Assembly: GCA_044892505.1 (NCBI GenBank)
Contig: CM097882.1
Location: 348,378,001 to 348,442,000 of the forward strand
Direction: 5' to 3'
DNA from: Schmidtea nova
Taxonomy: Eukaryota
DNA: 64,000 nt
Shown here: piece by piece, positions 226 to 40,279 of the stretch
How positions within the stretch are numbered: the first letter of the stretch is position 1
Layout of the letters: every line of letters starts with the position of its first letter
Program-made: the position numbers and the translations under genes
Notes under the pieces: model-generated
What the model saw: only the letters and a program-made list of their open reading frames with translations
What the model was told of the DNA's origin: nothing
The model's database searches: none

Positions 226-298
226 GGTTCGATGGTGTAGCGGTTATCACGTCTGCTTTACACGCAGAAGGTCCCCGGTTCGATCCCGGGTCGAACCA
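226..298 (+). tRNA. tRNA-Val-TAC: tRNA-Val(TAC)
   Basis: 73-nt cloverleaf: acceptor GGTTCGA/TCGAACC, anticodon arm TCTGC-TTTACAC-GCAGA, T-loop TTCGATC, discriminator A; T5 terminator follows. Confidence 0.96.
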
Positions 299-1407: not shown

Positions 1408-1416
1408 GGTTCGATG
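1408..1416 (+). pseudogene. 5' stub (nt 1-9) of tRNA-Val disrupted by copy 1
   Basis: GGTTCGATG at the expected 591-bp register, then element sequence. Confidence 0.9.
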
Positions 1417-4047
1417 ACTCAATCACCTGCTGCTCAGTCAACTGCTGCTGATGTGATGACTCAGTCTATTGGAAATCAGTCAACTGTGACGAAGAAATAT
1501 GAATTAGAAAACATTCTCAAGTATCAAATTTCCAGTTTGCAATGTTTTCAATCGATTTTGGATTATTTTTCGCAACTAAATGGTGGAAATCTCGCTACTG
1601 CCTCAGTTCTTTCTGATGCGAATGCAAGTCAACGGAGTTCTTTCGATCAAGGATCTAAAATTTCTCAAAACCAATCTGATAATATGCCACTTTCTTATGC
1701 TGATATTGAGACTAAATTCACTAAATCAAAGGATTTACTGATTGTCAAGCGCCTGGATTCATTGGAGTCTCAATTTATGAATATGGCTGAAAAGTTAGAT
1801 TATTTGGTTTCTTTTTTTAATGGCTCTGTTGATGATTTATCAGATTTTCCTAAAGTAAATGAAAATAATTTAAATAATAATCCTTTCAATAAAAATAAAG
1901 TTTTTGATATCAAAGATAAATTAATTGTAAATAATGTAGTTTTAGATAAATCAAATATTTCAGAATTTATTGAAAATAATATTGCTAAAATTCCTAATAG
2001 TTTAATTGATGTAAATAATAAAATGTGTAATTCAAATAATAAATTTCTAAATAACCCTAATAAAGAGAATGTTAAACATTTTAATAATCCCAAAGAAACA
2101 TCTTCAATTGATTTGACTAACGATAAAATTATGCCAAATGAAAACATAGAAATAATTATTAAAAATAATAAAAAATCTGTTAAAATTATAGAACCTAATA
2201 AAACAACTAAACAGAAGTATGATAAATTTGAATTTAAAAATCTGGTTCGTATTTTAACGAAAAGGGAACGCCAGAAAATCTTGAATGCCTTCCCTGCTTT
2301 AATACAACTAATTAAAAAGAAAGAATCACAGAGTAAATATTTTGAAATTAATAAATTTCTTTCGAGCAAAGATTTTAATGTGAATCACTTGAATTTAATT
2401 AATTTTGATTATTTTTTCTATAGAAATTGTAATCTTTGTGTATCTTTAAAATTGAACAACGCTCCTGTCATTTCATCAGCACCAAAACCTGTTGTTTTAA
2501 AAACTATTAAATTAATTGACCATAATATCGTCAAAATAAATTCTGAAATCCCTGACTTTGTTCGAGCTCCAATGTCAATTCGAAGATTTTTATTCAATCT
2601 TTCGCACGATCTTTCAAACACTGTTTCCATCAAGGATGAGAAACACAGGGGAAATAAAATAAATAACATTCTTACTTCAATGAAACATAAACAACAATTA
2701 CCAGATTATTTAATAAAATCAAACATTAAATACGAAAATGGTGAGTTCTTATTATTAGATTTGACTAACGATAAAATCAAATTGAACGACGATAATAACT
2801 TGATAAAATCAAATTTTTCTGAACTTACTAGAAGTCAGATTAAAAATCTTTACCATTCTTATCCTTCTCTTAAGGAAGTTTGTTTCGTTGAAAATCTTGA
2901 AACAAGATCATCATCCGTTAGTAAAATTATCGAATCTTTAAAGTTAATTAATGAATTTCCAAAAAATATCATTTTTAAAGAGGGTAAATTTTATCAGTCT
3001 GATAAAAGAACAATCTCACCTAGTAGTTCTCCTGACATAATGTTCAACCTTGGTCTTTTTAATTTAGCTAGTATGAGTAGAAAAGATTGTGAATTAAAAT
3101 CCATTTTAGAGAAGACTGGTTGTGACTTTAAAATAGTTGAAATAATATTCTACCTCAACTATTTAGGCTTGACTCAATCTTTAGAATTTTGCAAAAATCA
3201 AACTTATTCTGATTATGTGAGGAATTACGTCTGCAATTGCTGCTTGATAAACTCACTCTGTAGTATTGCTGATGTTGATTCGCTTTCATCTGAAGATTTT
3301 GAGGGTTGGGCGACCGAAATTGTTCAGAAAATCCCAGTTTCTTCCTATTACTTCAATAGCTGCCAGGAAAAGCTTTTAAAGCTGAAGCAATGGGACATTT
3401 CAACTAAAATCAAAAGAATCCATAACGTTATTTCACCTGAAATAATATCTTATTTAAATAACTTTCTTGACTCTGTAGACGTAAAATTTCCATCTAAGTC
3501 TCAACAACATAATATTCTAATTAAATTAATGAAAGCTATCAATGACATTAAAATTTTTGATGACATACACGGAAATAAAGCAAAAAGACTTGTTTACTTT
3601 TTGCTAAGAGATGCCAAGAAATATTTGAATAAAAATCAACGATTCAGATTATTTGAATCGAGCAATAAATATTGCACTTCAGAGATGGAGAATATAATTT
3701 CAGTAATAATTGAGAACCTTACCAAAGTTACTGACCATGAAGTTACTACTCCTGAAATCACAGTTGAAGAAACGCCAATTGAAATAACTTGTGATCCTGA
3801 ACCTATCGTCTTGATTAAGGAAATAAACTGTTTAAAATGTAACAATATCATCGAAAAATGCATTCTTGTTAGAGATGGAACAAACGTCAACATCTGTGAA
3901 AGCTGTCTATTTGACGCAATTACCTTTGAAAAGCCGATTCCTGAAGCTACTAATTCGGATATCGAAGAAAATATGGAAACAAATAGTAAGAAATCTTGTC
4001 CAAGACCTAGAAAAACAGACAAGAAAACATCAACCAAAGCAAAATGA
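1414..4047 (+). CDS. Retrotransposon ORF1, 877 aa, Asn/Lys-rich, C-terminal C-x2-C-x18-C-x2-C finger and basic tail
   Basis: Long ORF intact in all six copies; ATG overlaps tRNA nt 7-9; ends in TGA in frame with ORF2. Confidence 0.88.
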   Translation: MTQSPAAQSTAADVMTQSIGNQSTVTKKYELENILKYQISSLQCFQSILDYFSQLNGGNLATASVLSDANASQRSSFDQGSKISQNQSDNMPLSYADIETKFTKSKDLLIVKRLDSLESQFMNMAEKLDYLVSFFNGSVDDLSDFPKVNENNLNNNPFNKNKVFDIKDKLIVNNVVLDKSNISEFIENNIAKIPNSLIDVNNKMCNSNNKFLNNPNKENVKHFNNPKETSSIDLTNDKIMPNENIEIIIKNNKKSVKIIEPNKTTKQKYDKFEFKNLVRILTKRERQKILNAFPALIQLIKKKESQSKYFEINKFLSSKDFNVNHLNLINFDYFFYRNCNLCVSLKLNNAPVISSAPKPVVLKTIKLIDHNIVKINSEIPDFVRAPMSIRRFLFNLSHDLSNTVSIKDEKHRGNKINNILTSMKHKQQLPDYLIKSNIKYENGEFLLLDLTNDKIKLNDDNNLIKSNFSELTRSQIKNLYHSYPSLKEVCFVENLETRSSSVSKIIESLKLINEFPKNIIFKEGKFYQSDKRTISPSSSPDIMFNLGLFNLASMSRKDCELKSILEKTGCDFKIVEIIFYLNYLGLTQSLEFCKNQTYSDYVRNYVCNCCLINSLCSIADVDSLSSEDFEGWATEIVQKIPVSSYYFNSCQEKLLKLKQWDISTKIKRIHNVISPEIISYLNNFLDSVDVKFPSKSQQHNILIKLMKAINDIKIFDDIHGNKAKRLVYFLLRDAKKYLNKNQRFRLFESSNKYCTSEMENIISVIIENLTKVTDHEVTTPEITVEETPIEITCDPEPIVLIKEINCLKCNNIIEKCILVRDGTNVNICESCLFDAITFEKPIPEATNSDIEENMETNSKKSCPRPRKTDKKTSTKAK

Positions 4048-4053
4048 AGATGT

Positions 4054-7000
4054 GTGCCTGCATCAGCTCAATCGTCTGCCATTCCCTCTAATGAGACTGA
4101 TGCAGAGAGCACAACTAAAAATAATATTTCAACTATCGACAATCGTGATCCTGAAGTGTGGTTTTCTGATAATGATATTGATTGGTATCTTGAAAACCAC
4201 ATTGATAATCCAATGCATGGATATATTAAATGCTTTATAGTAAATATCATCTGTTCTAACATCACAGAAGATATTGTTGAAATTCCACCATCTATTAGCA
4301 ATGCTGAAATTGTATTTTGTCCACTCAACATTAACAATTCGCACTGGATTCTTTTTGTTTATAGTAAGAAAATGTTATCTTCTTACTTTATTGACCCAAT
4401 CCTTGCAAACAGACAAAAGCCAATCAATAAACAAATGGCTCAGAGAATTAACCTAAAACTGAATAGATTTTTTAATCTAAATATATCTGTGTCCCGACAT
4501 CCACACAAACATCTTGAATATCAAAATAACAGCTTTGATTGTGGCCCATTTACGTGTGCTTATGCTGTGATTATCAGTAAAGATTTGAACAGCTTTCCAA
4601 ATGGGTTCATAGAGAAAATTCGTACCAGTGTGCATGAAAATCAAAATCGTATGCAAATAACCGAATCCACCTTATTCGCTGGTACTAACTCCAAGATGGA
4701 CATGACCAAAATAAATATCAAGAAAGCCCTTGCAAAAAAGAAAGTCATCACCAACACCTCAGATATGACCAAAGTATTGAACACTCAAAAACCGTGTGTG
4801 TCATCAATAATTAGTAAATATTACGAAAGTAATTCTAAAATAACAGTCTTATCTGCCGAACTAACTTTAAACCTAATTGCACAAAATACCTCCTTCATAG
4901 CTGATAATGTCACTTTCAAGCAGTTCAAAGGAATCGATCATGTTATAAGTATCATTCCTAAATTTAACGATTGGTGTCTCTTTGTCTATTCGAATAAACT
5001 TGACAGGAGCTACATGTTCGACTTCAATTATCGAAACATTGATGAAAGGCTAATTGAAATTGGTGAAAAGATAACTGAATATCTGAATCAATTCACTCTT
5101 GTTTCTAAAATAAAATTCACACCTCATCATAGAATTTCTCATCCAACATTTCATTCTTACGATGATCAATATTTTGCAAGTTCTTTTATTGTATTTTTTG
5201 AGAAACTTGTCTTTGAAAGAATACTGGACAATGATAAGGTTTATGACTCATTAAGTGCTCTAAAATATCAGTCTTGTAAAGATCTTTCTCCTAGCCTAAG
5301 TTTCATTAATGGTAAAATATCCGACAAAATTATTGAGGAATATTTTGCTAGCCTAAACTTATCGACCAAATATATTCTTCTAAACACAACAATGTGTACT
5401 GCGCTTTCAGATGATTGCACTGAATACTTGAAAGACTTTGTAAACATTGAGTGCATGATGAAGGCTACTATAATCTTTGTAATCATTTCTCCTCCAAGAG
5501 CCAACGACTTGCTCATGGTTATTGATTACGACGCTGATGAGCACTATTTATTAAGCCCAGTCACTAATGACTTGTTCGTTATGACTGAAGGATTCTGCTA
5601 TAAATTACTAATTAAAATTAATGAGATTAGAGAGAGCACAGGACGTTCCTTGAAATCGCGTAATTGTCGACATGACGTTAAAGGTTCTGGCTTATTTAGT
5701 AGGTTATTAATCTGTGCCTTTATTAAATATTATGCATTTGACCGATCTCTAGAAAATATCAATCTTTATGAAATTGGCAAAATTATCTACTCACTTGTGC
5801 CATTAGTTGATAAAAATGATAATGCTGAGGAAGAAAGACGACTAAAATCAAAAGCTGTAAACTCTTTAAAACTAAATTTAAAACAGCGAATAGAAAAAGC
5901 CAATAATCTTATAATTTCACTTGAACACGCCAGTATTGATGAAATCATAAGTGGCATTCTTTCAAATATTCCTCGTCTTAAAGATTTGAACACCGATCAC
6001 ATTCGTACACCATATTTAGGTACTAAAATAGAAAAAGCTAGAAAATTCAAAAATTCCACTGAGTTTCTGTCAAACATGAAAAAGACTGTGTATAGGATTT
6101 TGGGTAACAACACAGAATCAATTGCACCTCCTTATCAGGAAATTATTGACACTTTCAGTCATCCTGATACATTACCTAGAAATTGGGAAAACATCTTAAA
6201 ATTCACTAAGAGTTCTAAATATAGTCTTGAATTAAATCCAATGACACCTAAAGAAATCCTTTCAAGTCTTTGCAAAGCTGACAACACTTCTCCAGGTCTT
6301 GATAATGTTTGTTATAAAGATCTTTTGTTATTAGACCCTGAATGTAAATTGCTAGCTTTTCTGTACAATAAAATCCTAAAATTAGACATTATTCCTACAA
6401 GTTGGAAATCATTTAAAACCATACTAATCCCCAAACCAGATAAAAATGGCCAATATCATAAAATATATTCTTGGCGACCAATTGCCTTATTATCTGTCAT
6501 TTACAAAGTCTTCGCTTCAGTTTTGGCAAATCGTCTAAGCTTATGGATAAGAAATAATTCCATGTTACACATTGGCCAAAAGGGTGGTTCGGAGTACGAA
6601 GGATGTATTGAACACAACTCTATTCTTTCTGCTATCGTCGAACATTCAAAATACAGCAAGTCTTCACCTTTAACGATAGCTTGGCTAGACATCAAAGATG
6701 CCTTCGGAAGTGTTCCACATGACTACATGTGGACACTGTTAAAACACATAAATGTTAGTGATAGGTTTGTAGGAATTTTAAAACTGCTCTATACTGATAC
6801 AAGCTCGTTTTACTGTTGCAATAAAATGCAGACACCGGATATTCCAATAAAGAAAGGAGTTAAACAAGGTTGTCCGATCTCAATGATATTGTTTGCAATA
6901 GCTATTAACCCAGTACTTGAGTCTATTAATCTATCAAACGTTAATCCTTTTACGATTGGAACATCTCCGGTACAGGTGTTGGCTTATGCGGATGATATCG

Positions 7001-8664
7001 CACTTATCGCGACAAATACCTCTGATCTGCAAATACTCATAAACGTTGCTGTAAACACCGCTAAAACAATTGGATTTGAATATCGTCCAGAAAAGTGCGC
7101 TTATATGCAATTCCCTAAAATAGAAACTGTAAGCGAGATTTCTGTCAACAACGTTCTTATCAAAAAGATTGCAACAAATGAATTTTACCAATACTTGGGA
7201 GTACCAATAGGTGACAATAATGATCAAAGTCCCTATGAAATTCTAAGCAAAGTAATTGAAGACACAAAGAAAATAGCAAATTCTGATCTTTACGGCTGGC
7301 AAAAACTTAAAGCGTATAAGGTCTTTCTGCATTCTCGCTTGATTTTTCCATTTAGAACTAGGGAAATCAAAACAAGTTCTTTAGCTGATTCGAGTAAAAA
7401 TTCAAAATTAAATGTAAATAATACGAGTATTTTGAGGAGTCATCTTAGAAAAATATTGCACTTGCCACACTACTCTGAGATTAGCTATTTTTATAATTCT
7501 ACTGAAAACGGCGGTGCAGGCTGCATAGACTTACTTGACGAGTATCATACACAGACAATCGTGTACTTTTTCCGTTTGTTAACATCAACGTGCGAATATT
7601 CGAAAAAGATAAATACTGACTCGCTTTTATTTGTCACAAGTCCGAGACTCGGAATCAAAAATCCAGTTCTTAAACAAAGTTTAGAATGGATAAATGGAAA
7701 AGAGAGCAAGAAAAACAACAGTGGTTGCAAAACTCGATTTTATCGGTTGCGATCATCCATTGCTTACTTTTCTAAAGTTCACAACATTAAATTGTTATTT
7801 GAAACAGTGAAAGGGAATCCTTCTATCCGTATAACCACTACACTTAAGGGAACACGTATATTATTACCAACATTAAGAAAAGCCTTGTCAATGATTTTAC
7901 ATTCAGCTCTCCAGGATTCGTATCTCGAGAAATGGGAGAATAGCAATCATAATAATCTGCTTGTATCTGCGATAAAACTCTGTCCACTTGTCAACAAGCT
8001 TATTTTCCGCAGTGATTTGACAGAATTTGAATGGAGATTCGTCCATCGAGCAAGAACGAATACATTATCAATATTTGCGAAGCCATATAAAACTGGCGAA
8101 AATCGTCTTTGTCGTAGATGTAAGCTTGAAGACGAGACTTTATCACACGTTCTTCAAACTTGTAAAATGAACAAATCTTTGGCAACTAGTCGACATAACG
8201 CTTGCTTAGAAAAAATAAAAAGCGAGTTGAAAGATCCAAACTTGTTAGTTGTTGCGGATCATAAATGTTCCCTAGTACCGACATCAACTGAACGCGTTGA
8301 TTTAATAATAACCAATAATGATAAAAAGACCATATTATTGGTAGACATGAAATGCCCAATCGATTCGGTGCCCAACTTTGACTTGGCTGATAAAAAAAAC
8401 ATAGAAAAGTATGATAAACTAAAATCAGAAATTAAAATAGCCAAACCCGATTATAAAGTTGAGTTGTTTACCTGCATCATAGGCTCATTAGGATCCATTG
8501 AAATTAAAACACCTGATCTTTTAGTAAAAATGGGAGTAAAAGAAAATAAAGTAAAACGTCTGATGAAAGAGTGTGCAATTAGCAATATTGCGCACTCGGC
8601 CAAAATTTGGTACTTTCATACCAATGGCTTTCTTCCAGATAATATAAGACAAACTTGTAAATAA
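4054..8664 (+). CDS. Retrotransposon ORF2: Ulp1-like protease (1 intact + 2 degenerate repeats), reverse transcriptase, CCHC knuckle, restriction-like endonuclease
   Basis: HW (H97), D114, QNNSFDCG (C163); RT motifs SPGLD, WRPIALL, LDIKDAFGSV, GVKQGCP, YADD (nt 6985), YLGV; CRRC-x8-H-x4-C, RHN, RVD, D-M-K, KY. The frame is open from 4048; the track start is GTG and the first ATG is at 4213. Confidence 0.95.
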   Translation: MPASAQSSAIPSNETDAESTTKNNISTIDNRDPEVWFSDNDIDWYLENHIDNPMHGYIKCFIVNIICSNITEDIVEIPPSISNAEIVFCPLNINNSHWILFVYSKKMLSSYFIDPILANRQKPINKQMAQRINLKLNRFFNLNISVSRHPHKHLEYQNNSFDCGPFTCAYAVIISKDLNSFPNGFIEKIRTSVHENQNRMQITESTLFAGTNSKMDMTKINIKKALAKKKVITNTSDMTKVLNTQKPCVSSIISKYYESNSKITVLSAELTLNLIAQNTSFIADNVTFKQFKGIDHVISIIPKFNDWCLFVYSNKLDRSYMFDFNYRNIDERLIEIGEKITEYLNQFTLVSKIKFTPHHRISHPTFHSYDDQYFASSFIVFFEKLVFERILDNDKVYDSLSALKYQSCKDLSPSLSFINGKISDKIIEEYFASLNLSTKYILLNTTMCTALSDDCTEYLKDFVNIECMMKATIIFVIISPPRANDLLMVIDYDADEHYLLSPVTNDLFVMTEGFCYKLLIKINEIRESTGRSLKSRNCRHDVKGSGLFSRLLICAFIKYYAFDRSLENINLYEIGKIIYSLVPLVDKNDNAEEERRLKSKAVNSLKLNLKQRIEKANNLIISLEHASIDEIISGILSNIPRLKDLNTDHIRTPYLGTKIEKARKFKNSTEFLSNMKKTVYRILGNNTESIAPPYQEIIDTFSHPDTLPRNWENILKFTKSSKYSLELNPMTPKEILSSLCKADNTSPGLDNVCYKDLLLLDPECKLLAFLYNKILKLDIIPTSWKSFKTILIPKPDKNGQYHKIYSWRPIALLSVIYKVFASVLANRLSLWIRNNSMLHIGQKGGSEYEGCIEHNSILSAIVEHSKYSKSSPLTIAWLDIKDAFGSVPHDYMWTLLKHINVSDRFVGILKLLYTDTSSFYCCNKMQTPDIPIKKGVKQGCPISMILFAIAINPVLESINLSNVNPFTIGTSPVQVLAYADDIALIATNTSDLQILINVAVNTAKTIGFEYRPEKCAYMQFPKIETVSEISVNNVLIKKIATNEFYQYLGVPIGDNNDQSPYEILSKVIEDTKKIANSDLYGWQKLKAYKVFLHSRLIFPFRTREIKTSSLADSSKNSKLNVNNTSILRSHLRKILHLPHYSEISYFYNSTENGGAGCIDLLDEYHTQTIVYFFRLLTSTCEYSKKINTDSLLFVTSPRLGIKNPVLKQSLEWINGKESKKNNSGCKTRFYRLRSSIAYFSKVHNIKLLFETVKGNPSIRITTTLKGTRILLPTLRKALSMILHSALQDSYLEKWENSNHNNLLVSAIKLCPLVNKLIFRSDLTEFEWRFVHRARTNTLSIFAKPYKTGENRLCRRCKLEDETLSHVLQTCKMNKSLATSRHNACLEKIKSELKDPNLLVVADHKCSLVPTSTERVDLIITNNDKKTILLVDMKCPIDSVPNFDLADKKNIEKYDKLKSEIKIAKPDYKVELFTCIIGSLGSIEIKTPDLLVKMGVKENKVKRLMKECAISNIAHSAKIWYFHTNGFLPDNIRQTCK
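4058..4105 (+). promoter_or_regulatory. Stem-loop 10 nt downstream of the ORF1 UGA; candidate readthrough/recoding stimulator (same in all six copies)
   Basis: CTGCATCAG (4058-4066) pairs with CTGATGCAG (4097-4105); CTCA (4067-4070) pairs with TGAG (4092-4095) across one bulged A. Confidence 0.55.
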
Positions 8665-9013: not shown

Positions 9014-9019
9014 TGTTTA

Positions 9020-9074
9020 TTATCACGTCTGCTTTACACGCAGAAGGTCCCCGGTTCGATCCCGGGTCGAACCA
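9020..9074 (+). pseudogene. 3' remnant (nt 19-73) of tRNA-Val(TAC) after copy 1
   Basis: TTATCACG...CGAACCA; nt 10-18 missing. Confidence 0.92.
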
Positions 9075-28934: not shown

Positions 28935-28989
28935 TTATCACGTCTGCTTTACACGCAGAAGGTCCCCGGTTCGATCCCGGGTCGAACCA
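28935..28989 (+). pseudogene. 3' remnant of tRNA-Val(TAC) after copy 3
   Basis: nt 19-73. Confidence 0.92.
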
Positions 28990-29137
28990 AATTTTTATTG
29001 TAAATTGTTAAATCTTGTTTACTATGTTTCCATTGTTTACTAGTGTTATTTTGTGTGTGTGTGTGTTTTATTAGTAAATCAGATCAATTTATTTAGCTGA
29101 AAGTTGGTAACAAACGAAAATTTGAAAATATTTACAG

Positions 29138-29211
29138 GGTTCGATGGTGTAGCGGTTATCACGTCTGCTTCACACGCAGAAGGTTCCCCGGTTCGATCCC
29201 GGGTCGAACCA
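29138..29211 (+). tRNA. tRNA-Val-CAC: tRNA-Val(CAC), +T in variable loop, recombinant with TAC-type 3' flank
   Basis: AGAAGGTTCCCC; followed by AATTTTTATTG (TAC spacer). Confidence 0.8.
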
Positions 29212-29359
29212 AATTTTTATTGTAAATTGTTAAATCTTGTTTACTATGTTTCCATTGTTTACTAGTGTTATTTTGTGTGTGTGTGTGTTTTATTAGTAAA
29301 TCAGATCAATTTATTTAGCTGAAAGTTGGTAACAAACGAAAATTTGAAAATATTTGCAG

Positions 29360-29432
29360 GGTTCGATGGTGTAGCGGTTATCACGTCTGCTTCACACGCA
29401 GAAGGTCCCCGGTTCGATCCCGGGTCGAACCA
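29360..29432 (+). tRNA. tRNA-Val-CAC: tRNA-Val(CAC), upstream flank variant TTTGCAG
   Basis: Canonical body. Confidence 0.95.
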
Positions 29433-29729
29433 TATTTTATTAATTAGAAACTTCCTAATCTTGATTTTTTCTCAATGGAACACCTTTCTCATATATGTTA
29501 CAATATTAAAAATGATTGAATAATCAGAGAAAAAAGTTAAAATTTCATTTTCATAAATGTAGTGTGTGAAAGCTTTCTATCCTTTTGCAATTTTATGATT
29601 ATTTTGTGCAGTGTTGTTTATTTAAATATGTAACTGTTGAAAAAAAGAATATTGGATATGAAAATGGATAAAGTATTGCAAGTGTTGATATATATATTGT
29701 AAATTTTAACGATTGATAAATTCTTTCAA

Positions 29730-31502: not shown

Positions 31503-31574
31503 GGTTCGATGGTGTAGCGGTTATCACGTCTGCTTTACACGCAGAAGGTCCCCGGTTCGATCCCGGTCGAACCA
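31503..31574 (+). tRNA. tRNA-Val-TAC: tRNA-Val(TAC) with 1-nt G deletion in the T-stem (possible pseudogene or sequencing error)
   Basis: GATCCCGGTCGAACC instead of GATCCCGGGTCGAACC; seen once. Confidence 0.65.
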
Positions 31575-31722
31575 AATTTTTATTGTAAATTGTTAAATCT
31601 TGTTTACTATGTTTCCATTGTTTACTAGTGTTATTTTGTGTGTGTGTGTGTTTTATTAGTAAATCAGATCAATTTATTTAGCTGAAAGTTGGTAACAAAC
31701 GAAAATTTGAAAATATTTACAG

Positions 31723-31796
31723 GGTTCGATGGTGTAGCGGTTATCACGTCTGCTTCACACGCAGAAGGTTCCCCGGTTCGATCCCGGGTCGAACCA
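31723..31796 (+). tRNA. tRNA-Val-CAC: tRNA-Val(CAC), +T variable-loop variant
   Basis: 74 nt, AGAAGGTTCCCC. Confidence 0.8.
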
Positions 31797-32093
31797 TATT
31801 TTATTAATTAGAAACTTCCTAATCTTGATTTTTTCTCAATGGAACACCTTTCTCATATATGTTACAATATTAAAAATGATTGAATAATCAGAGAAAAAAG
31901 TTAAAATTTCATTTTCATAAATGTAGTGTGTGAAAGCTTTCTATCCTTTTGCAATTTTATGATTATTTTGTGCAGTGTTGTTTATTTAAATATGTAACTG
32001 TTGAAAAAAAGAATATTGGATATGAAAATGGATAAAGTATTGCAAGTGTTGATATATATATTGTAAATTTTAACGATTGATAAATTCTTTCAA

Positions 32094-32102
32094 GGTTCGA
32101 TG
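32094..32102 (+). pseudogene. 5' stub of tRNA-Val disrupted by copy 4
   Basis: GGTTCGATG|ACTC. Confidence 0.9.
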
Positions 32103-39705: not shown

Positions 39706-39760
39706 TTATCACGTCTGCTTTACACGCAGAAGGTCCCCGGTTCGATCCCGGGTCGAACCA
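39706..39760 (+). pseudogene. 3' remnant of tRNA-Val(TAC) after copy 4
   Basis: nt 19-73. Confidence 0.92.
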
Positions 39761-39908
39761 AATTTTTATTGTAAATTGTTAAATCTTGTTTACTATGTTT
39801 CCATTGTTTACTAGTGTTATTTTGTGTGTGTGTGTGTTTTATTAGTAAATCAGATCAATTTATTTAGCTGAAAGTTGGTAACAAACGAAAATTTGAAAAT
39901 ATTTACAG

Positions 39909-39982
39909 GGTTCGATGGTGTAGCGGTTATCACGTCTGCTTCACACGCAGAAGGTTCCCCGGTTCGATCCCGGGTCGAACCA
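39909..39982 (+). tRNA. tRNA-Val-CAC: tRNA-Val(CAC), +T variable-loop variant
   Basis: 74 nt, AGAAGGTTCCCC. Confidence 0.8.
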
Positions 39983-40279
39983 TATTTTATTAATTAGAAA
40001 CTTCCTAATCTTGATTTTTTCTCAATGGAACACCTTTCTCATATATGTTACAATATTAAAAATGATTGAATAATCAGAGAAAAAAGTTAAAATTTCATTT
40101 TCATAAATGTAGTGTGTGAAAGCTTTCTATCCTTTTGCAATTTTATGATTATTTTGTGCAGTGTTGTTTATTTAAATATGTAACTGTTGAAAAAAAGAAT
40201 ATTGGATATGAAAATGGATAAAGTATTGCAAGTGTTGATATATATATTGTAAATTTTAACGATTGATAAATTCTTTCAA

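What the first reader, a model, noticed from the sequence alone, without database searches (positions are those of the whole stretch)
4156..5748. Three tandem Ulp1-like folds in ORF2: one catalytic, two pseudo-proteases
Seen: repeat 1 (about aa 35-180) has WFSDNDIDWYL, NNSHWILFVYSKKMLSSYFID and QNNSFDCGPF, an intact H97/D114/C163 triad with Q157. Repeat 2 (about aa 240-390) aligns by eye (FNDWCLFVYSNKLDRSYMFD), but His is replaced by Asp and there is no catalytic Cys. Repeat 3 (about aa 419-565) keeps KISDKIIEEYF, ATIIFVII and YLLSP-like segments with no triad. Known: NeSL-1 carries a single Ulp1/C48-like protease. Inference: the dead repeats may act as SUMO/ubiquitin-like binding or substrate modules. 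The active repeat could process the readthrough polyprotein or remove SUMO from host silencing factors. Repeat 3 is the weakest call.
Basis: partly seen in the sequence, partly recalled or inferred. Interest (0 to 1): 0.72.

Follow-up and report, generated by a model that had tools for sequence, protein, structure and literature searches.

The report
Retrotransposon with three tandem Ulp1 folds
A jumping gene that inserts into a valine tRNA gene encodes one intact SUMO-protease-type domain followed by two old, catalytically dead copies of the same fold; about a dozen unnamed relatives share this layout, and standard annotation and the papers I searched do not report it.

Summary
ORF2 (4054-8664, 1536 aa) starts with three tandem Ulp1/C48 (clan CE) folds.

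- **Module 1 (aa 28-210):** passes Pfam Peptidase_C48. It has H97/D114/Q157/C163, which are invariant in 24 of 25 relatives.
- **Modules 2 (aa 247-400) and 3 (aa 412-590):** no Pfam or PDB sequence hit. Profile-profile comparison links all three (E 1e-6 to 3e-7). Template-free AlphaFold models (pLDDT 83-85) hit only CE-clan proteases in the PDB (Ulp1 E 4e-7, TM 0.72; NEDP1 E 6e-5).
- **Triad positions:** module 2 has D306/D323/D371. Module 3 has N484/S501/S549. Both are dead in this element.

The three-module layout occurs in at least 13 diverged elements, all from unnamed metagenome or SRA contigs. The modules co-diverge, so the triplication is old and conserved.

Function is inferred, not shown. 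ORF1 ends in an in-frame UGA in 7 of 7 elements, followed by a covarying stem-loop, which suggests readthrough. A GG motif (LFAG|T here) sits about 47 residues after the catalytic Cys in 17 of 21 elements. It is usually the only GG in 700 residues, which suggests CE-type self-processing. SUMO binding by the dead modules is untested, and the loss of the Trp clamp argues against the usual binding mode.

I rate it a new variant of a known kind (NeSL/Utopia-like elements with an Ulp1 protease).

The parts
1414..4047 (+). ORF1 (877 aa), no Pfam family. It has a CxxC...CxxC motif near its C-terminus (aa 806-836, nt 3829-3921) and ends in TGA at 4045-4047.
4045..4105 (+). In-frame UGA between ORF1 and ORF2, plus a downstream stem-loop (arms 4058-4067 and 4096-4105). 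Candidate programmed readthrough signal.
   Evidence: ORF2 is in frame 0 after TGA in 7 of 7 elements. Fold z-score is -3.6. The consensus helix has 10 pairs, 5 of them with compensatory changes.
4054..8664 (+). ORF2 (1536 aa as listed from GTG; the frame is open from 4048): three Ulp1 folds, then RT, CCHC and a restriction-like endonuclease.
4135..4683 (+). Module 1 (aa 28-210): intact Ulp1/C48 protease domain. H97 is at 4342-4344, D114 at 4393-4395, Q157 at 4522-4524, C163 at 4540-4542.
   Evidence: Pfam PF02902 33.9 bits. PDB SENP2/Ulp1 hits. Triad invariant in 24 of 25 relatives.
4672..4686 (+). L207-F208-A209-G210|T211: candidate self-cleavage site. It aligns with the GG(G) motif of relatives, for example LFGG|S and LFGG|A.
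   Evidence: GG lies 45-52 residues after the catalytic Cys in 17 of 21 elements and is usually the only GG in the first 700 aa. The cleavage itself is inferred.
4684..4791 (+). Lys-rich linker (aa 211-246), partly modelled as disordered.
   Evidence: pLDDT below 50 for aa 231-246 in the module 2 model.
4792..5253 (+). Module 2 (aa 247-400): pseudo-protease with an Ulp1 fold. The triad positions hold D306, D323 and D371.
5287..5823 (+). Module 3 (aa 412-590): pseudo-protease with an Ulp1 fold. The triad positions hold N484, S501 and S549. It carries the conserved motif H540-D-x-x-G-S545-G546-L-F-S549...C554.
6427..7206 (+). Reverse transcriptase (aa 792-1051), with YADD at aa 978-981.
   Evidence: Pfam RVT_1 1.8e-29
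8110..8358 (+). CCHC motif (aa 1353-1370) and restriction-like endonuclease motifs: RHN at 1380-1382, D1416, D1431-x-K1433.
   Evidence: Read directly from the sequence. Weak zf-RVT hit. The RLE assignment rests on my knowledge of R2-group motifs.

Best explanation
The N-terminal 590 residues of ORF2 are three tandem copies of the Ulp1/SENP (peptidase C48, clan CE) fold. They arose by an old internal triplication in one family of restriction-like-endonuclease non-LTR retrotransposons.

Module 1 is an intact Cys protease.

Inferred mechanism:
1. ORF2 is made as an ORF1-ORF2 fusion by readthrough of a leaky UGA, helped by a 3' stem-loop.
2. Module 1 then cuts the polyprotein after the GG/AG motif in the linker just downstream of itself (LFAG|T211 here). 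This is how viral CE-clan proteases cut after GG or AG.
3. Cleavage releases ORF1-protease from a mature protein that begins with modules 2 and 3, followed by RT and the endonuclease.

In this element modules 2 and 3 lack the catalytic triad. They are kept as non-catalytic domains at the N-terminus of the RT protein, in the place where related elements carry zinc-finger DNA-binding domains. What they bind is unknown.

Shown: the three folds, the catalytic-residue pattern, and the conservation and co-divergence of the modules across the family. Also shown: the in-frame UGA with a covarying helix, and the conserved GG motif.

Inferred: the readthrough, the cleavage at that site, and any role of modules 2 and 3.
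For: Folds and homology:
- Module 1: Pfam and PDB hits.
- BLASTP module 1 against 2, E 1e-5.
- hhalign E 1.4e-6, 3.3e-5 and 3.1e-7 for the three pairs.
- Cross-profile HMM hits of 5e-10 and 5.5e-9 over whole domains.
- AlphaFold pLDDT 83-85. All Foldseek PDB hits with E<=1e-3 (31 and 13), and most weaker ones, are CE-clan proteases, with Ulp1 at E 4.1e-7 and TM 0.72.
- Viral library hits are Ulp1-like proteases of giant viruses, ASFV S273R and adenain.

Catalytic pattern: module 1 has H/D/Q/C invariant in 24 of 25. Module 2 never has His or Cys. Module 3 of the window has N484/S501/S549.

Selection:
- The three-module layout is present in at least 13 ORF2s with 40-60% RT identity.
- Each module forms its own clade (module 3 100/99, module 2 94/87), with congruent internal topology.
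- Differences among the six window copies are mostly synonymous.

Processing model:
- UGA with frame 0 in 7 of 7 elements.
- ORF2 stops are TAA, TGA or TAG, so the code is standard.
- The stem-loop shows covariation.
- GG motif in 17 of 21 linkers, usually the only GG in 700 aa at 2-3% Gly.
Against: - No experiment. Activity of module 1, readthrough and cleavage are all unobserved.
- The window element has AG rather than GG at the proposed site. Three relatives (P0023, P0015, P0009) also lack GG there.
- GG motifs are also conserved inside the RT (QKGG, aa 844) and at aa 1153, so GG conservation alone does not prove a cleavage site.
- No second site separating ORF1 from module 1 was found.
- The Foldseek TM-scores for module 2 are moderate (0.55-0.62).
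- The family alignments behind the models have only 11 sequences each.
Confidence: 0.6

Rival explanations
1. Module 1 acts mainly in trans on host SUMO, NEDD8 or ubiquitin conjugates, for example to remove SUMO from host silencing or chromatin factors at the tRNA array. It would not process the element's own polyprotein.
For: Module 1 keeps all features of cellular SENP/Ulp1 enzymes, including both Trp residues (W36, W98) and Q157. The closest structural relatives of the fold are deSUMOylases and deNEDDylases.
Against: The conserved GG/AG motif in an otherwise unconserved linker directly after the protease and the readthrough layout are what a cis-processing protease would need. Neither fact excludes a second role in trans.
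Confidence: 0.15
2. Modules 2 and 3 are binding modules for ubiquitin-like proteins or for C-terminal GG tails. One version is that they hold the GG-ended product of module 1.
For: They keep the CE fold. In most relatives module 3 keeps His, Asn and a Ser at the nucleophile position. That resembles engineered Cys-to-Ser SENP mutants used to trap SUMO, such as PDB 2g4d, which appears among the hits.
Against: Neither module keeps the Trp pair. W36 maps to P247 in module 2 and K421 in module 3. W98 maps to W307, which is present in only about half of the module 2 sequences, and to D485 in module 3. The window's module 3 has also lost the His. There is no direct evidence of binding.
Confidence: 0.2
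3. Modules 2 and 3 are functionless relics of a duplication, drifting neutrally.
For: Catalytic residues are lost. Identity between relatives is lower than in the RT: 40-47% against 60% for the window and P0001.
Against: They are kept intact, with no stops or frameshifts, in at least 13 diverged elements, and they co-diverge with module 1 and the RT. They have conserved motifs, such as S545-G546 invariant in 22 of 22. They also give confident fold predictions.
Confidence: 0.05

Closest known systems
[quoted passage not shown]
   Same: An Ulp1/C48 protease lies upstream of the RT, followed by a C-terminal zinc finger and restriction-like endonuclease. Both integrate site-specifically into a multicopy small-RNA gene.
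   Different: - Those elements are described with one protease domain. This one has three folds, two of them dead.
- This element has a separate 877-aa ORF1 ending in a leaky-looking UGA.
- The target is tRNA-Val(UAC), not the spliced leader or U2.
- RT-tree membership in the NeSL clade was not tested.
NeSL-related tRNA-gene-specific elements NeSL-1_TV (tRNA-Pro), LIN15_SM (tRNA-Arg) and LIN25_SM (tRNA-Glu) (PMC4640811)
   Same: Elements of the restriction-like-endonuclease type that insert into tRNA genes.
   Different: The tRNA target differs. I had no sequences of these elements to compare, and the cited text mentions no protease modules for them.
Viral clan-CE processing proteases: adenovirus protease (adenain), vaccinia I7L and African swine fever virus pS273R (my own knowledge of these families)
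   Same: Same fold class; S273R and adenain appear among the weak Foldseek hits. They mature polyproteins by cutting after GG or AG, which matches the conserved GG/AG linker motif here.
   Different: They are single active domains, not tandem arrays with dead copies. They act on virion precursors rather than on a retrotransposon ORF1-ORF2 fusion.
Retroviral Gag-(stop readthrough)-protease-RT, as in murine leukaemia virus (my own knowledge)
   Same: An in-frame leaky stop with a downstream RNA structure, and the protease as the first domain after the stop.
   Different: The retroviral protease is an aspartic protease and the stop is UAG with a pseudoknot. Here the protease is a Cys protease of clan CE, the stop is UGA, and the structure is a simple stem-loop as far as tested.
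Tandem papain-like autoproteases with one dead copy, such as arterivirus nsp1 PCP-alpha/PCP-beta (my own knowledge)
   Same: Duplicated cysteine-protease folds in a polyprotein, where an inactivated copy is kept as a functional domain.
   Different: Different protease clan and different genetic element. The relation is an analogy only.

Membership tests
Peptidase C48 (Ulp1/SENP), clan CE - module 1 (aa 28-210) | Matches Pfam PF02902 above the gathering score | tested here: met
   33.9 bits for aa 1-230 and 29.8 bits for the whole ORF2, against a cut-off of 20.7.
Peptidase C48 (Ulp1/SENP), clan CE - module 1 (aa 28-210) | His-Asp-Cys triad plus the oxyanion Gln, in the right motifs | tested here: met
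   H97, D114, Q157 and C163 align with the SHW, D and Q..DCG motifs of Ulp1 and SENP2. They are invariant in 24 of 25 family members.
Peptidase C48 (Ulp1/SENP), clan CE - module 1 (aa 28-210) | Cleaves after the Gly-Gly of a ubiquitin-like protein or substrate | not testable with these tools
   Needs an enzyme assay.
Peptidase C48 (Ulp1/SENP), clan CE - module 2 (aa 247-400) | CE-clan fold | tested here: met
   Model pLDDT 84.8. All 13 PDB hits with E<=1e-3 are CE-clan, led by NEDP1 at 5.8e-5 and Ulp1 at 1.4e-4.
Peptidase C48 (Ulp1/SENP), clan CE - module 2 (aa 247-400) | Pfam PF02902 match and catalytic triad | tested here: not met
   No Pfam hit. D306 sits at the His position and D371 at the Cys position. 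The His position is never His in 21 relatives.
Peptidase C48 (Ulp1/SENP), clan CE - module 3 (aa 412-590) | CE-clan fold | tested here: met
   Model pLDDT 83.3. Ulp1 1euv_A hits at E 4.1e-7 with TM 0.72, and all 31 hits with E<=1e-3 are CE-clan.
Peptidase C48 (Ulp1/SENP), clan CE - module 3 (aa 412-590) | Pfam PF02902 match and catalytic triad | tested here: not met
   No Pfam or PDB sequence hit. N484, S501 and S549 occupy the His, Asp and Cys positions. Relatives mostly have H, N and S there.
NeSL clade of non-LTR retrotransposons | RT followed by a CCHC zinc finger and a restriction-like endonuclease | tested here: met
   RVT_1 at 1.8e-29. The CCHC motif at aa 1353-1370 and the RHN and D..D-x-K motifs at aa 1380-1433 were read from the sequence. 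The endonuclease assignment is by motif only.
NeSL clade of non-LTR retrotransposons | N-terminal Ulp1-like protease | tested here: met
   the feature is described for NeSL and Utopia-1_TSP in PMC4640811.
NeSL clade of non-LTR retrotransposons | RT groups with NeSL-1 in a phylogeny | not tested
   No reference NeSL, Utopia or R2 sequences were at hand. The nearest named RT relatives, at 28-31% identity, are arthropod proteins labelled R2 and nematode RT proteins.
NeSL clade of non-LTR retrotransposons | Inserts into spliced-leader genes | tested here: not met
   The insertion lies inside the tRNA-Val(UAC) gene of a 591-bp tRNA array. tRNA-specific NeSL relatives are known.

The most novel reading that the evidence does not exclude
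The two dead Ulp1 folds are the working N-terminal domain of the mature RT-endonuclease protein. In this family they would have replaced the zinc-finger/Myb region that related elements use.

One version: they hold the GG-ended ORF1-protease product after self-cleavage, so that the zinc-finger-bearing ORF1 part stays attached to the RT during integration at the tRNA-Val gene.

A second version: in the many relatives whose module 3 keeps His, Asn and Ser at the triad positions, that module is a Ser-type hydrolase derived from a Cys protease.
Probability: 0.2. Interest if true: 0.75.

Novelty: new variant of a known kind. Interest (0 to 1): 0.55.

Why it matters
Ulp1-type proteases in non-LTR retrotransposons have been noted (NeSL, Utopia), but I know of no experiment on their function.

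- This family offers a concrete, testable processing model: a leaky UGA with a stem-loop, the protease as the first domain after the stop, and a conserved GG/AG site right behind it.
- It shows that a retrotransposon has kept two catalytically dead protease folds across at least 13 diverged elements. Pfam sees only one protease domain in every member.
- It is a natural case for studying what pseudo-proteases of the SUMO-protease fold do.
- It also suggests that similar hidden modules may exist in other annotated elements.

Tried and rejected
- **Pfam on modules 2 and 3 alone:** no C48 hit, only a chance DHC_N1 hit.
- **PDB sequence searches:** nothing relevant for aa 231-579 as one sequence, or for the 11-sequence profiles of modules 3 and 2. 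The dead modules are therefore linked to C48 only through the family's own module 1 and through structure.
- **BLASTP of module 3 against modules 1 and 2:** not significant. Two-sequence hhalign was weak until the family alignments were enlarged.
- **Word-index protein search with aa 1-600:** one relative only. I then used the exhaustive profile search, which found 15 representatives, all from the same element family and none a cellular C48 protein.
- **Source names for relatives:** none; all come from Logan, ENA or JGI assemblies, so the host organism remains unknown.
- **tRNA scan of six relatives' contigs:** none found, because the contigs end close to the elements. Whether the whole family targets tRNA genes is open.
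- **Order of the duplications:** the module tree gives three clean clades. The single-module outgroups join module 1, probably because active enzymes share constraints, so the order is unresolved.
- **UGA as a sense codon in the host:** rejected. UGA occurs once in about 2400 codons, and two relatives end ORF2 with TGA.
- **S545 of the invariant GSG motif as the Cys equivalent:** rejected in favour of S549. Ungapped profile alignments pair C163 with S549 and pair S545-G546 with the Q-x-N-G turn. The modelled helix also starts at S549.
- **Literature searches:** nothing on tandem or pseudo Ulp1 modules in retrotransposons, or on readthrough in non-LTR elements.
Full report
**Context.** The window is a tandem array of 591-bp units. 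Each unit holds a tRNA-Val(TAC) and a tRNA-Val(CAC) gene. The array is interrupted by six intact copies of a retroelement about 7.6 kb long. Each copy has ORF1 (877 aa) and ORF2 (1536 aa). The window has no N. ORF2 of the first copy runs 4054-8664, and the finding covers its first 565 codons. Pfam finds RVT_1 at aa 792-1051 (1.8e-29) and a single Peptidase_C48 at aa 81-179. A CCHC motif and restriction-like endonuclease motifs follow at aa 1353-1435. The element is therefore a site-specific non-LTR retrotransposon of the restriction-like-endonuclease type with an Ulp1 protease. That layout is described for nematode NeSL and for Utopia-1_TSP (PMC4640811).

**The observation.** All quoted motifs are present at the stated residues.

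Module 1 passes Pfam's C48 threshold: 33.9 bits against 20.7. It aligns with SENP2 and Ulp1 from the PDB, with H97, D114, Q157 and C163 in the catalytic motifs.

Module 2 is significantly similar to module 1 in a direct BLASTP comparison: E 1e-5, 29% identity over 80 residues, W98-K176 against W307 onward.

Module 3 is not detectable by BLASTP, by Pfam or by PDB sequence search.

**Relatives.**
- The word-index search with aa 1-600 found one relative, P0001 (46% identity).
- Modules 2 and 3 were still without a family, so I ran the exhaustive profile search with them. It returned only 15 cluster representatives among 1.84 billion, all from the same kind of element and none a cellular C48 protein.
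- A search with the RT-endonuclease part added more full-length members, P0021-P0035.
- None carries a name. All come from Logan, ENA or JGI assemblies.

**Homology of the three modules.** I built family alignments: A9 for module 1 (6 sequences), A8 for module 2 (11) and A7 for module 3 (11).
- hhalign module 1 against 2: 90% probability, E 1.4e-6.
- hhalign module 1 against 3: 72% probability, E 3.3e-5, over 141 collinear columns.
- hhalign module 2 against 3: 93% probability, E 3.1e-7, over 147 columns.
- HMM cross-hits are stronger in some relatives. The module 3 profile matches module 1 of P0024 at 5e-10, and the module 1 profile matches module 3 of P0028 at 5.5e-9. Both cover the whole domain.

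**Structure.** Template-free AlphaFold2 models were built from those alignments.
- Module 3: pLDDT 83.3, pTM 0.83.
- Module 2: pLDDT 84.8, pTM 0.81.
- Foldseek against the PDB, module 3: Ulp1 1euv_A at E 4.1e-7, TM 0.72, 178 columns. All 31 hits with E<=1e-3 are CE-clan proteases: SENP1/2/3/5, NEDP1, XopD and a Chaetomium Ulp1-like protease.
- Foldseek against the PDB, module 2: NEDP1/Den1 at 5.8e-5 and Ulp1 at 1.4e-4, TM 0.55-0.62. All 13 hits with E<=1e-3 are CE clan.
- Viral library, module 3: Ulp1-like proteases of phaeoviruses and mimiviruses, with ASFV S273R and adenain further down the list.

**Catalytic residues.** The modelled strands and helices agree with this mapping. In both models the helix that carries the nucleophile in C48 enzymes starts exactly at D371 and at S549.

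| Position | Module 1 | Module 2 | Module 3 |
|---|---|---|---|
| His | H97 | D306 | N484 |
| Asp | D114 | D323 | S501 |
| Cys | C163 | D371 | S549 |

Across the family:
- Module 1 keeps H/D/Q/C in 24 of 25 sequences.
- Module 2 never has His or Cys.
- Module 3 has His in 15 of 24, Asn in 19 of 24, and Ser at the nucleophile position in 17 of 22. It looks like a Cys-to-Ser version of the site in most relatives.
- The window's copy has also lost the His and the Asn.
- The invariant S545-G546 aligns with the Q-x-N-G turn of module 1, not with the Cys.
- The two Trp residues of module 1 (W36, W98) clamp the Gly-Gly tail in SENPs; that is from my own knowledge. Module 3 has lost both. Module 2 keeps the second in only about half of its sequences.

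**Distribution and age.**
- Module profiles find the 1-2-3 order in at least 13 distinct ORF2s with 40-60% RT identity to the window.
- P0009 has two modules (1 and 3).
- P0016 has module 1 plus a chimera of the front of module 2 and the back of module 3.
- More distant elements have a single C48: P0035, P0102, P0106 and P0132.
- Pfam reports one C48 at most in every three-module protein.
- In a tree of all modules, module 3 forms a clade (100/99) and module 2 forms a clade (94/87). Module 1 groups with the single-module outgroups (95/91). The branching inside the three clades is congruent.
- The triplication therefore predates the family's radiation, and all three modules have been kept since. 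The order of the two duplications is unresolved.
- Among the six window copies, ORF2 differences are mostly synonymous.

First, ORF1 ends in TGA and ORF2 continues in the same frame in all seven elements examined.
- ORF2 itself ends in TAA, TGA or TAG, so UGA is a real stop in these hosts.
- About 10 nt downstream lies a stem-loop. Its fold z-score in the window is -3.6.
- The seven-sequence consensus helix has 10 pairs, 5 of them with compensatory changes; one pair, for example, is UA in 4 sequences and CG in 3.
- This looks like programmed readthrough. It also explains the conserved peptides PAS and DAES at the start of ORF2.

Second, a GG or GGG motif lies 45-52 residues after the catalytic Cys in 17 of 21 elements. 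It sits in a linker that is otherwise unconserved.
- It is usually the only GG in the first 700 residues of proteins with 2-3% Gly.
- The window has LFAG|T (aa 207-211), which aligns with LFGG|S and LFGG|A in P0026 and P0027.
- Clan-CE proteases cut after GG, and vaccinia I7L cuts after AG (my own knowledge).

Taken together, the most likely mechanism is this. Readthrough makes an ORF1-ORF2 fusion. Module 1 cuts after G210. The mature RT-endonuclease protein then starts with the two dead folds. ORF2 has no N-terminal zinc finger or Myb motif. The only such motif upstream of the RT is the CxxC...CxxC near the end of ORF1. All of this is inference. GG motifs inside the RT (aa 844) and at aa 1153 are conserved too, so the linker motif is suggestive rather than proof.

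**What the dead modules do is unknown.** Their retention argues for a function. The loss of the Trp clamp argues against standard SUMO-tail binding. The Ser at the nucleophile position in module 3 of most relatives recalls the Cys-to-Ser SENP mutants used to trap substrates (for example 2g4d), so a binding role remains possible.

**Novelty.** The papers searched mention a single Ulp1 protease in NeSL and Utopia-1_TSP, and nothing on tandem or dead copies. I rate this a new variant of a known kind.

Noticed in passing
window 4045-4105 (same position in the other five copies); L001-L006 at their ORF1/ORF2 junctions: ORF1 and ORF2 are in the same frame, separated by a single UGA, in 7 of 7 elements. 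About 10 nt downstream is a conserved stem-loop (arms 4058-4067 and 4096-4105) with compensatory base changes between elements. This looks like a programmed readthrough signal in a non-LTR retrotransposon.
   Followed up: partly
window 1408-1416 (5' junction) and about 9019-9020 (3' junction); same in the other copies: The element sits inside the tRNA-Val(UAC) gene. tRNA nt 1-9 (GGTTCGATG) run straight into the element, so the ORF1 ATG (1414-1416) is tRNA nt 7-9. The tRNA resumes at about nt 19-20 after the element, so 9-10 nt of the D-arm are missing. There is no poly(A) tail at the 3' end.
   Followed up: partly
window 226-298 against 447-519, and all later units: Only the tRNA-Val(TAC) gene is interrupted. 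The tRNA-Val(CAC) gene in the same unit is identical in the aligned sequence except for the anticodon base, including the insertion site. The choice of target must depend on flanking sequence, or it reflects amplification of one original insertion.
   Followed up: no
window 1-31000: The first three copies repeat with a period of 9958 bp (element plus four 591-bp units). All six copies are nearly identical. The array-plus-element block was therefore probably amplified by unequal crossing-over rather than by six separate insertions.
   Followed up: partly
window 28935-29456, 31520-31819, 39706-40005: There are irregular or partial array units: a 222-bp offset copy, and copies at 79-90% identity. 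Between the elements starting at 32100 and 40286 there is less than one full unit.
   Followed up: no
window 1414-4047 (ORF1): The 877-aa ORF1 has no Pfam family. It carries a CxxC-x6-C-x11-CxxC motif at aa 806-836, just upstream of the UGA. This may be the zinc finger that single-ORF relatives such as P0102 carry upstream of their protease.
   Followed up: partly
L002 (P0009) and L005 (P0016): Two relatives have only two modules. P0009 has modules 1 and 3. P0016 has module 1 plus a chimera with a module-2-like front half and a module-3-like back half (HDV...SG...C motif). An in-register deletion between the two dead repeats would produce such a chimera.
   Followed up: partly
P0032 (distant relative, single module): Its only C48-like module has R, I and S at the His, Gln and Cys positions. 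Loss of the active site has therefore also happened in a single-module element.
   Followed up: no
window aa 653-658 of ORF2 (nt 6010-6027): A PYLG(K/T)K motif between module 3 and the RT is conserved in six of seven elements aligned. Its role is unknown; it could be part of the RT N-terminal extension or a second processing site.
   Followed up: no
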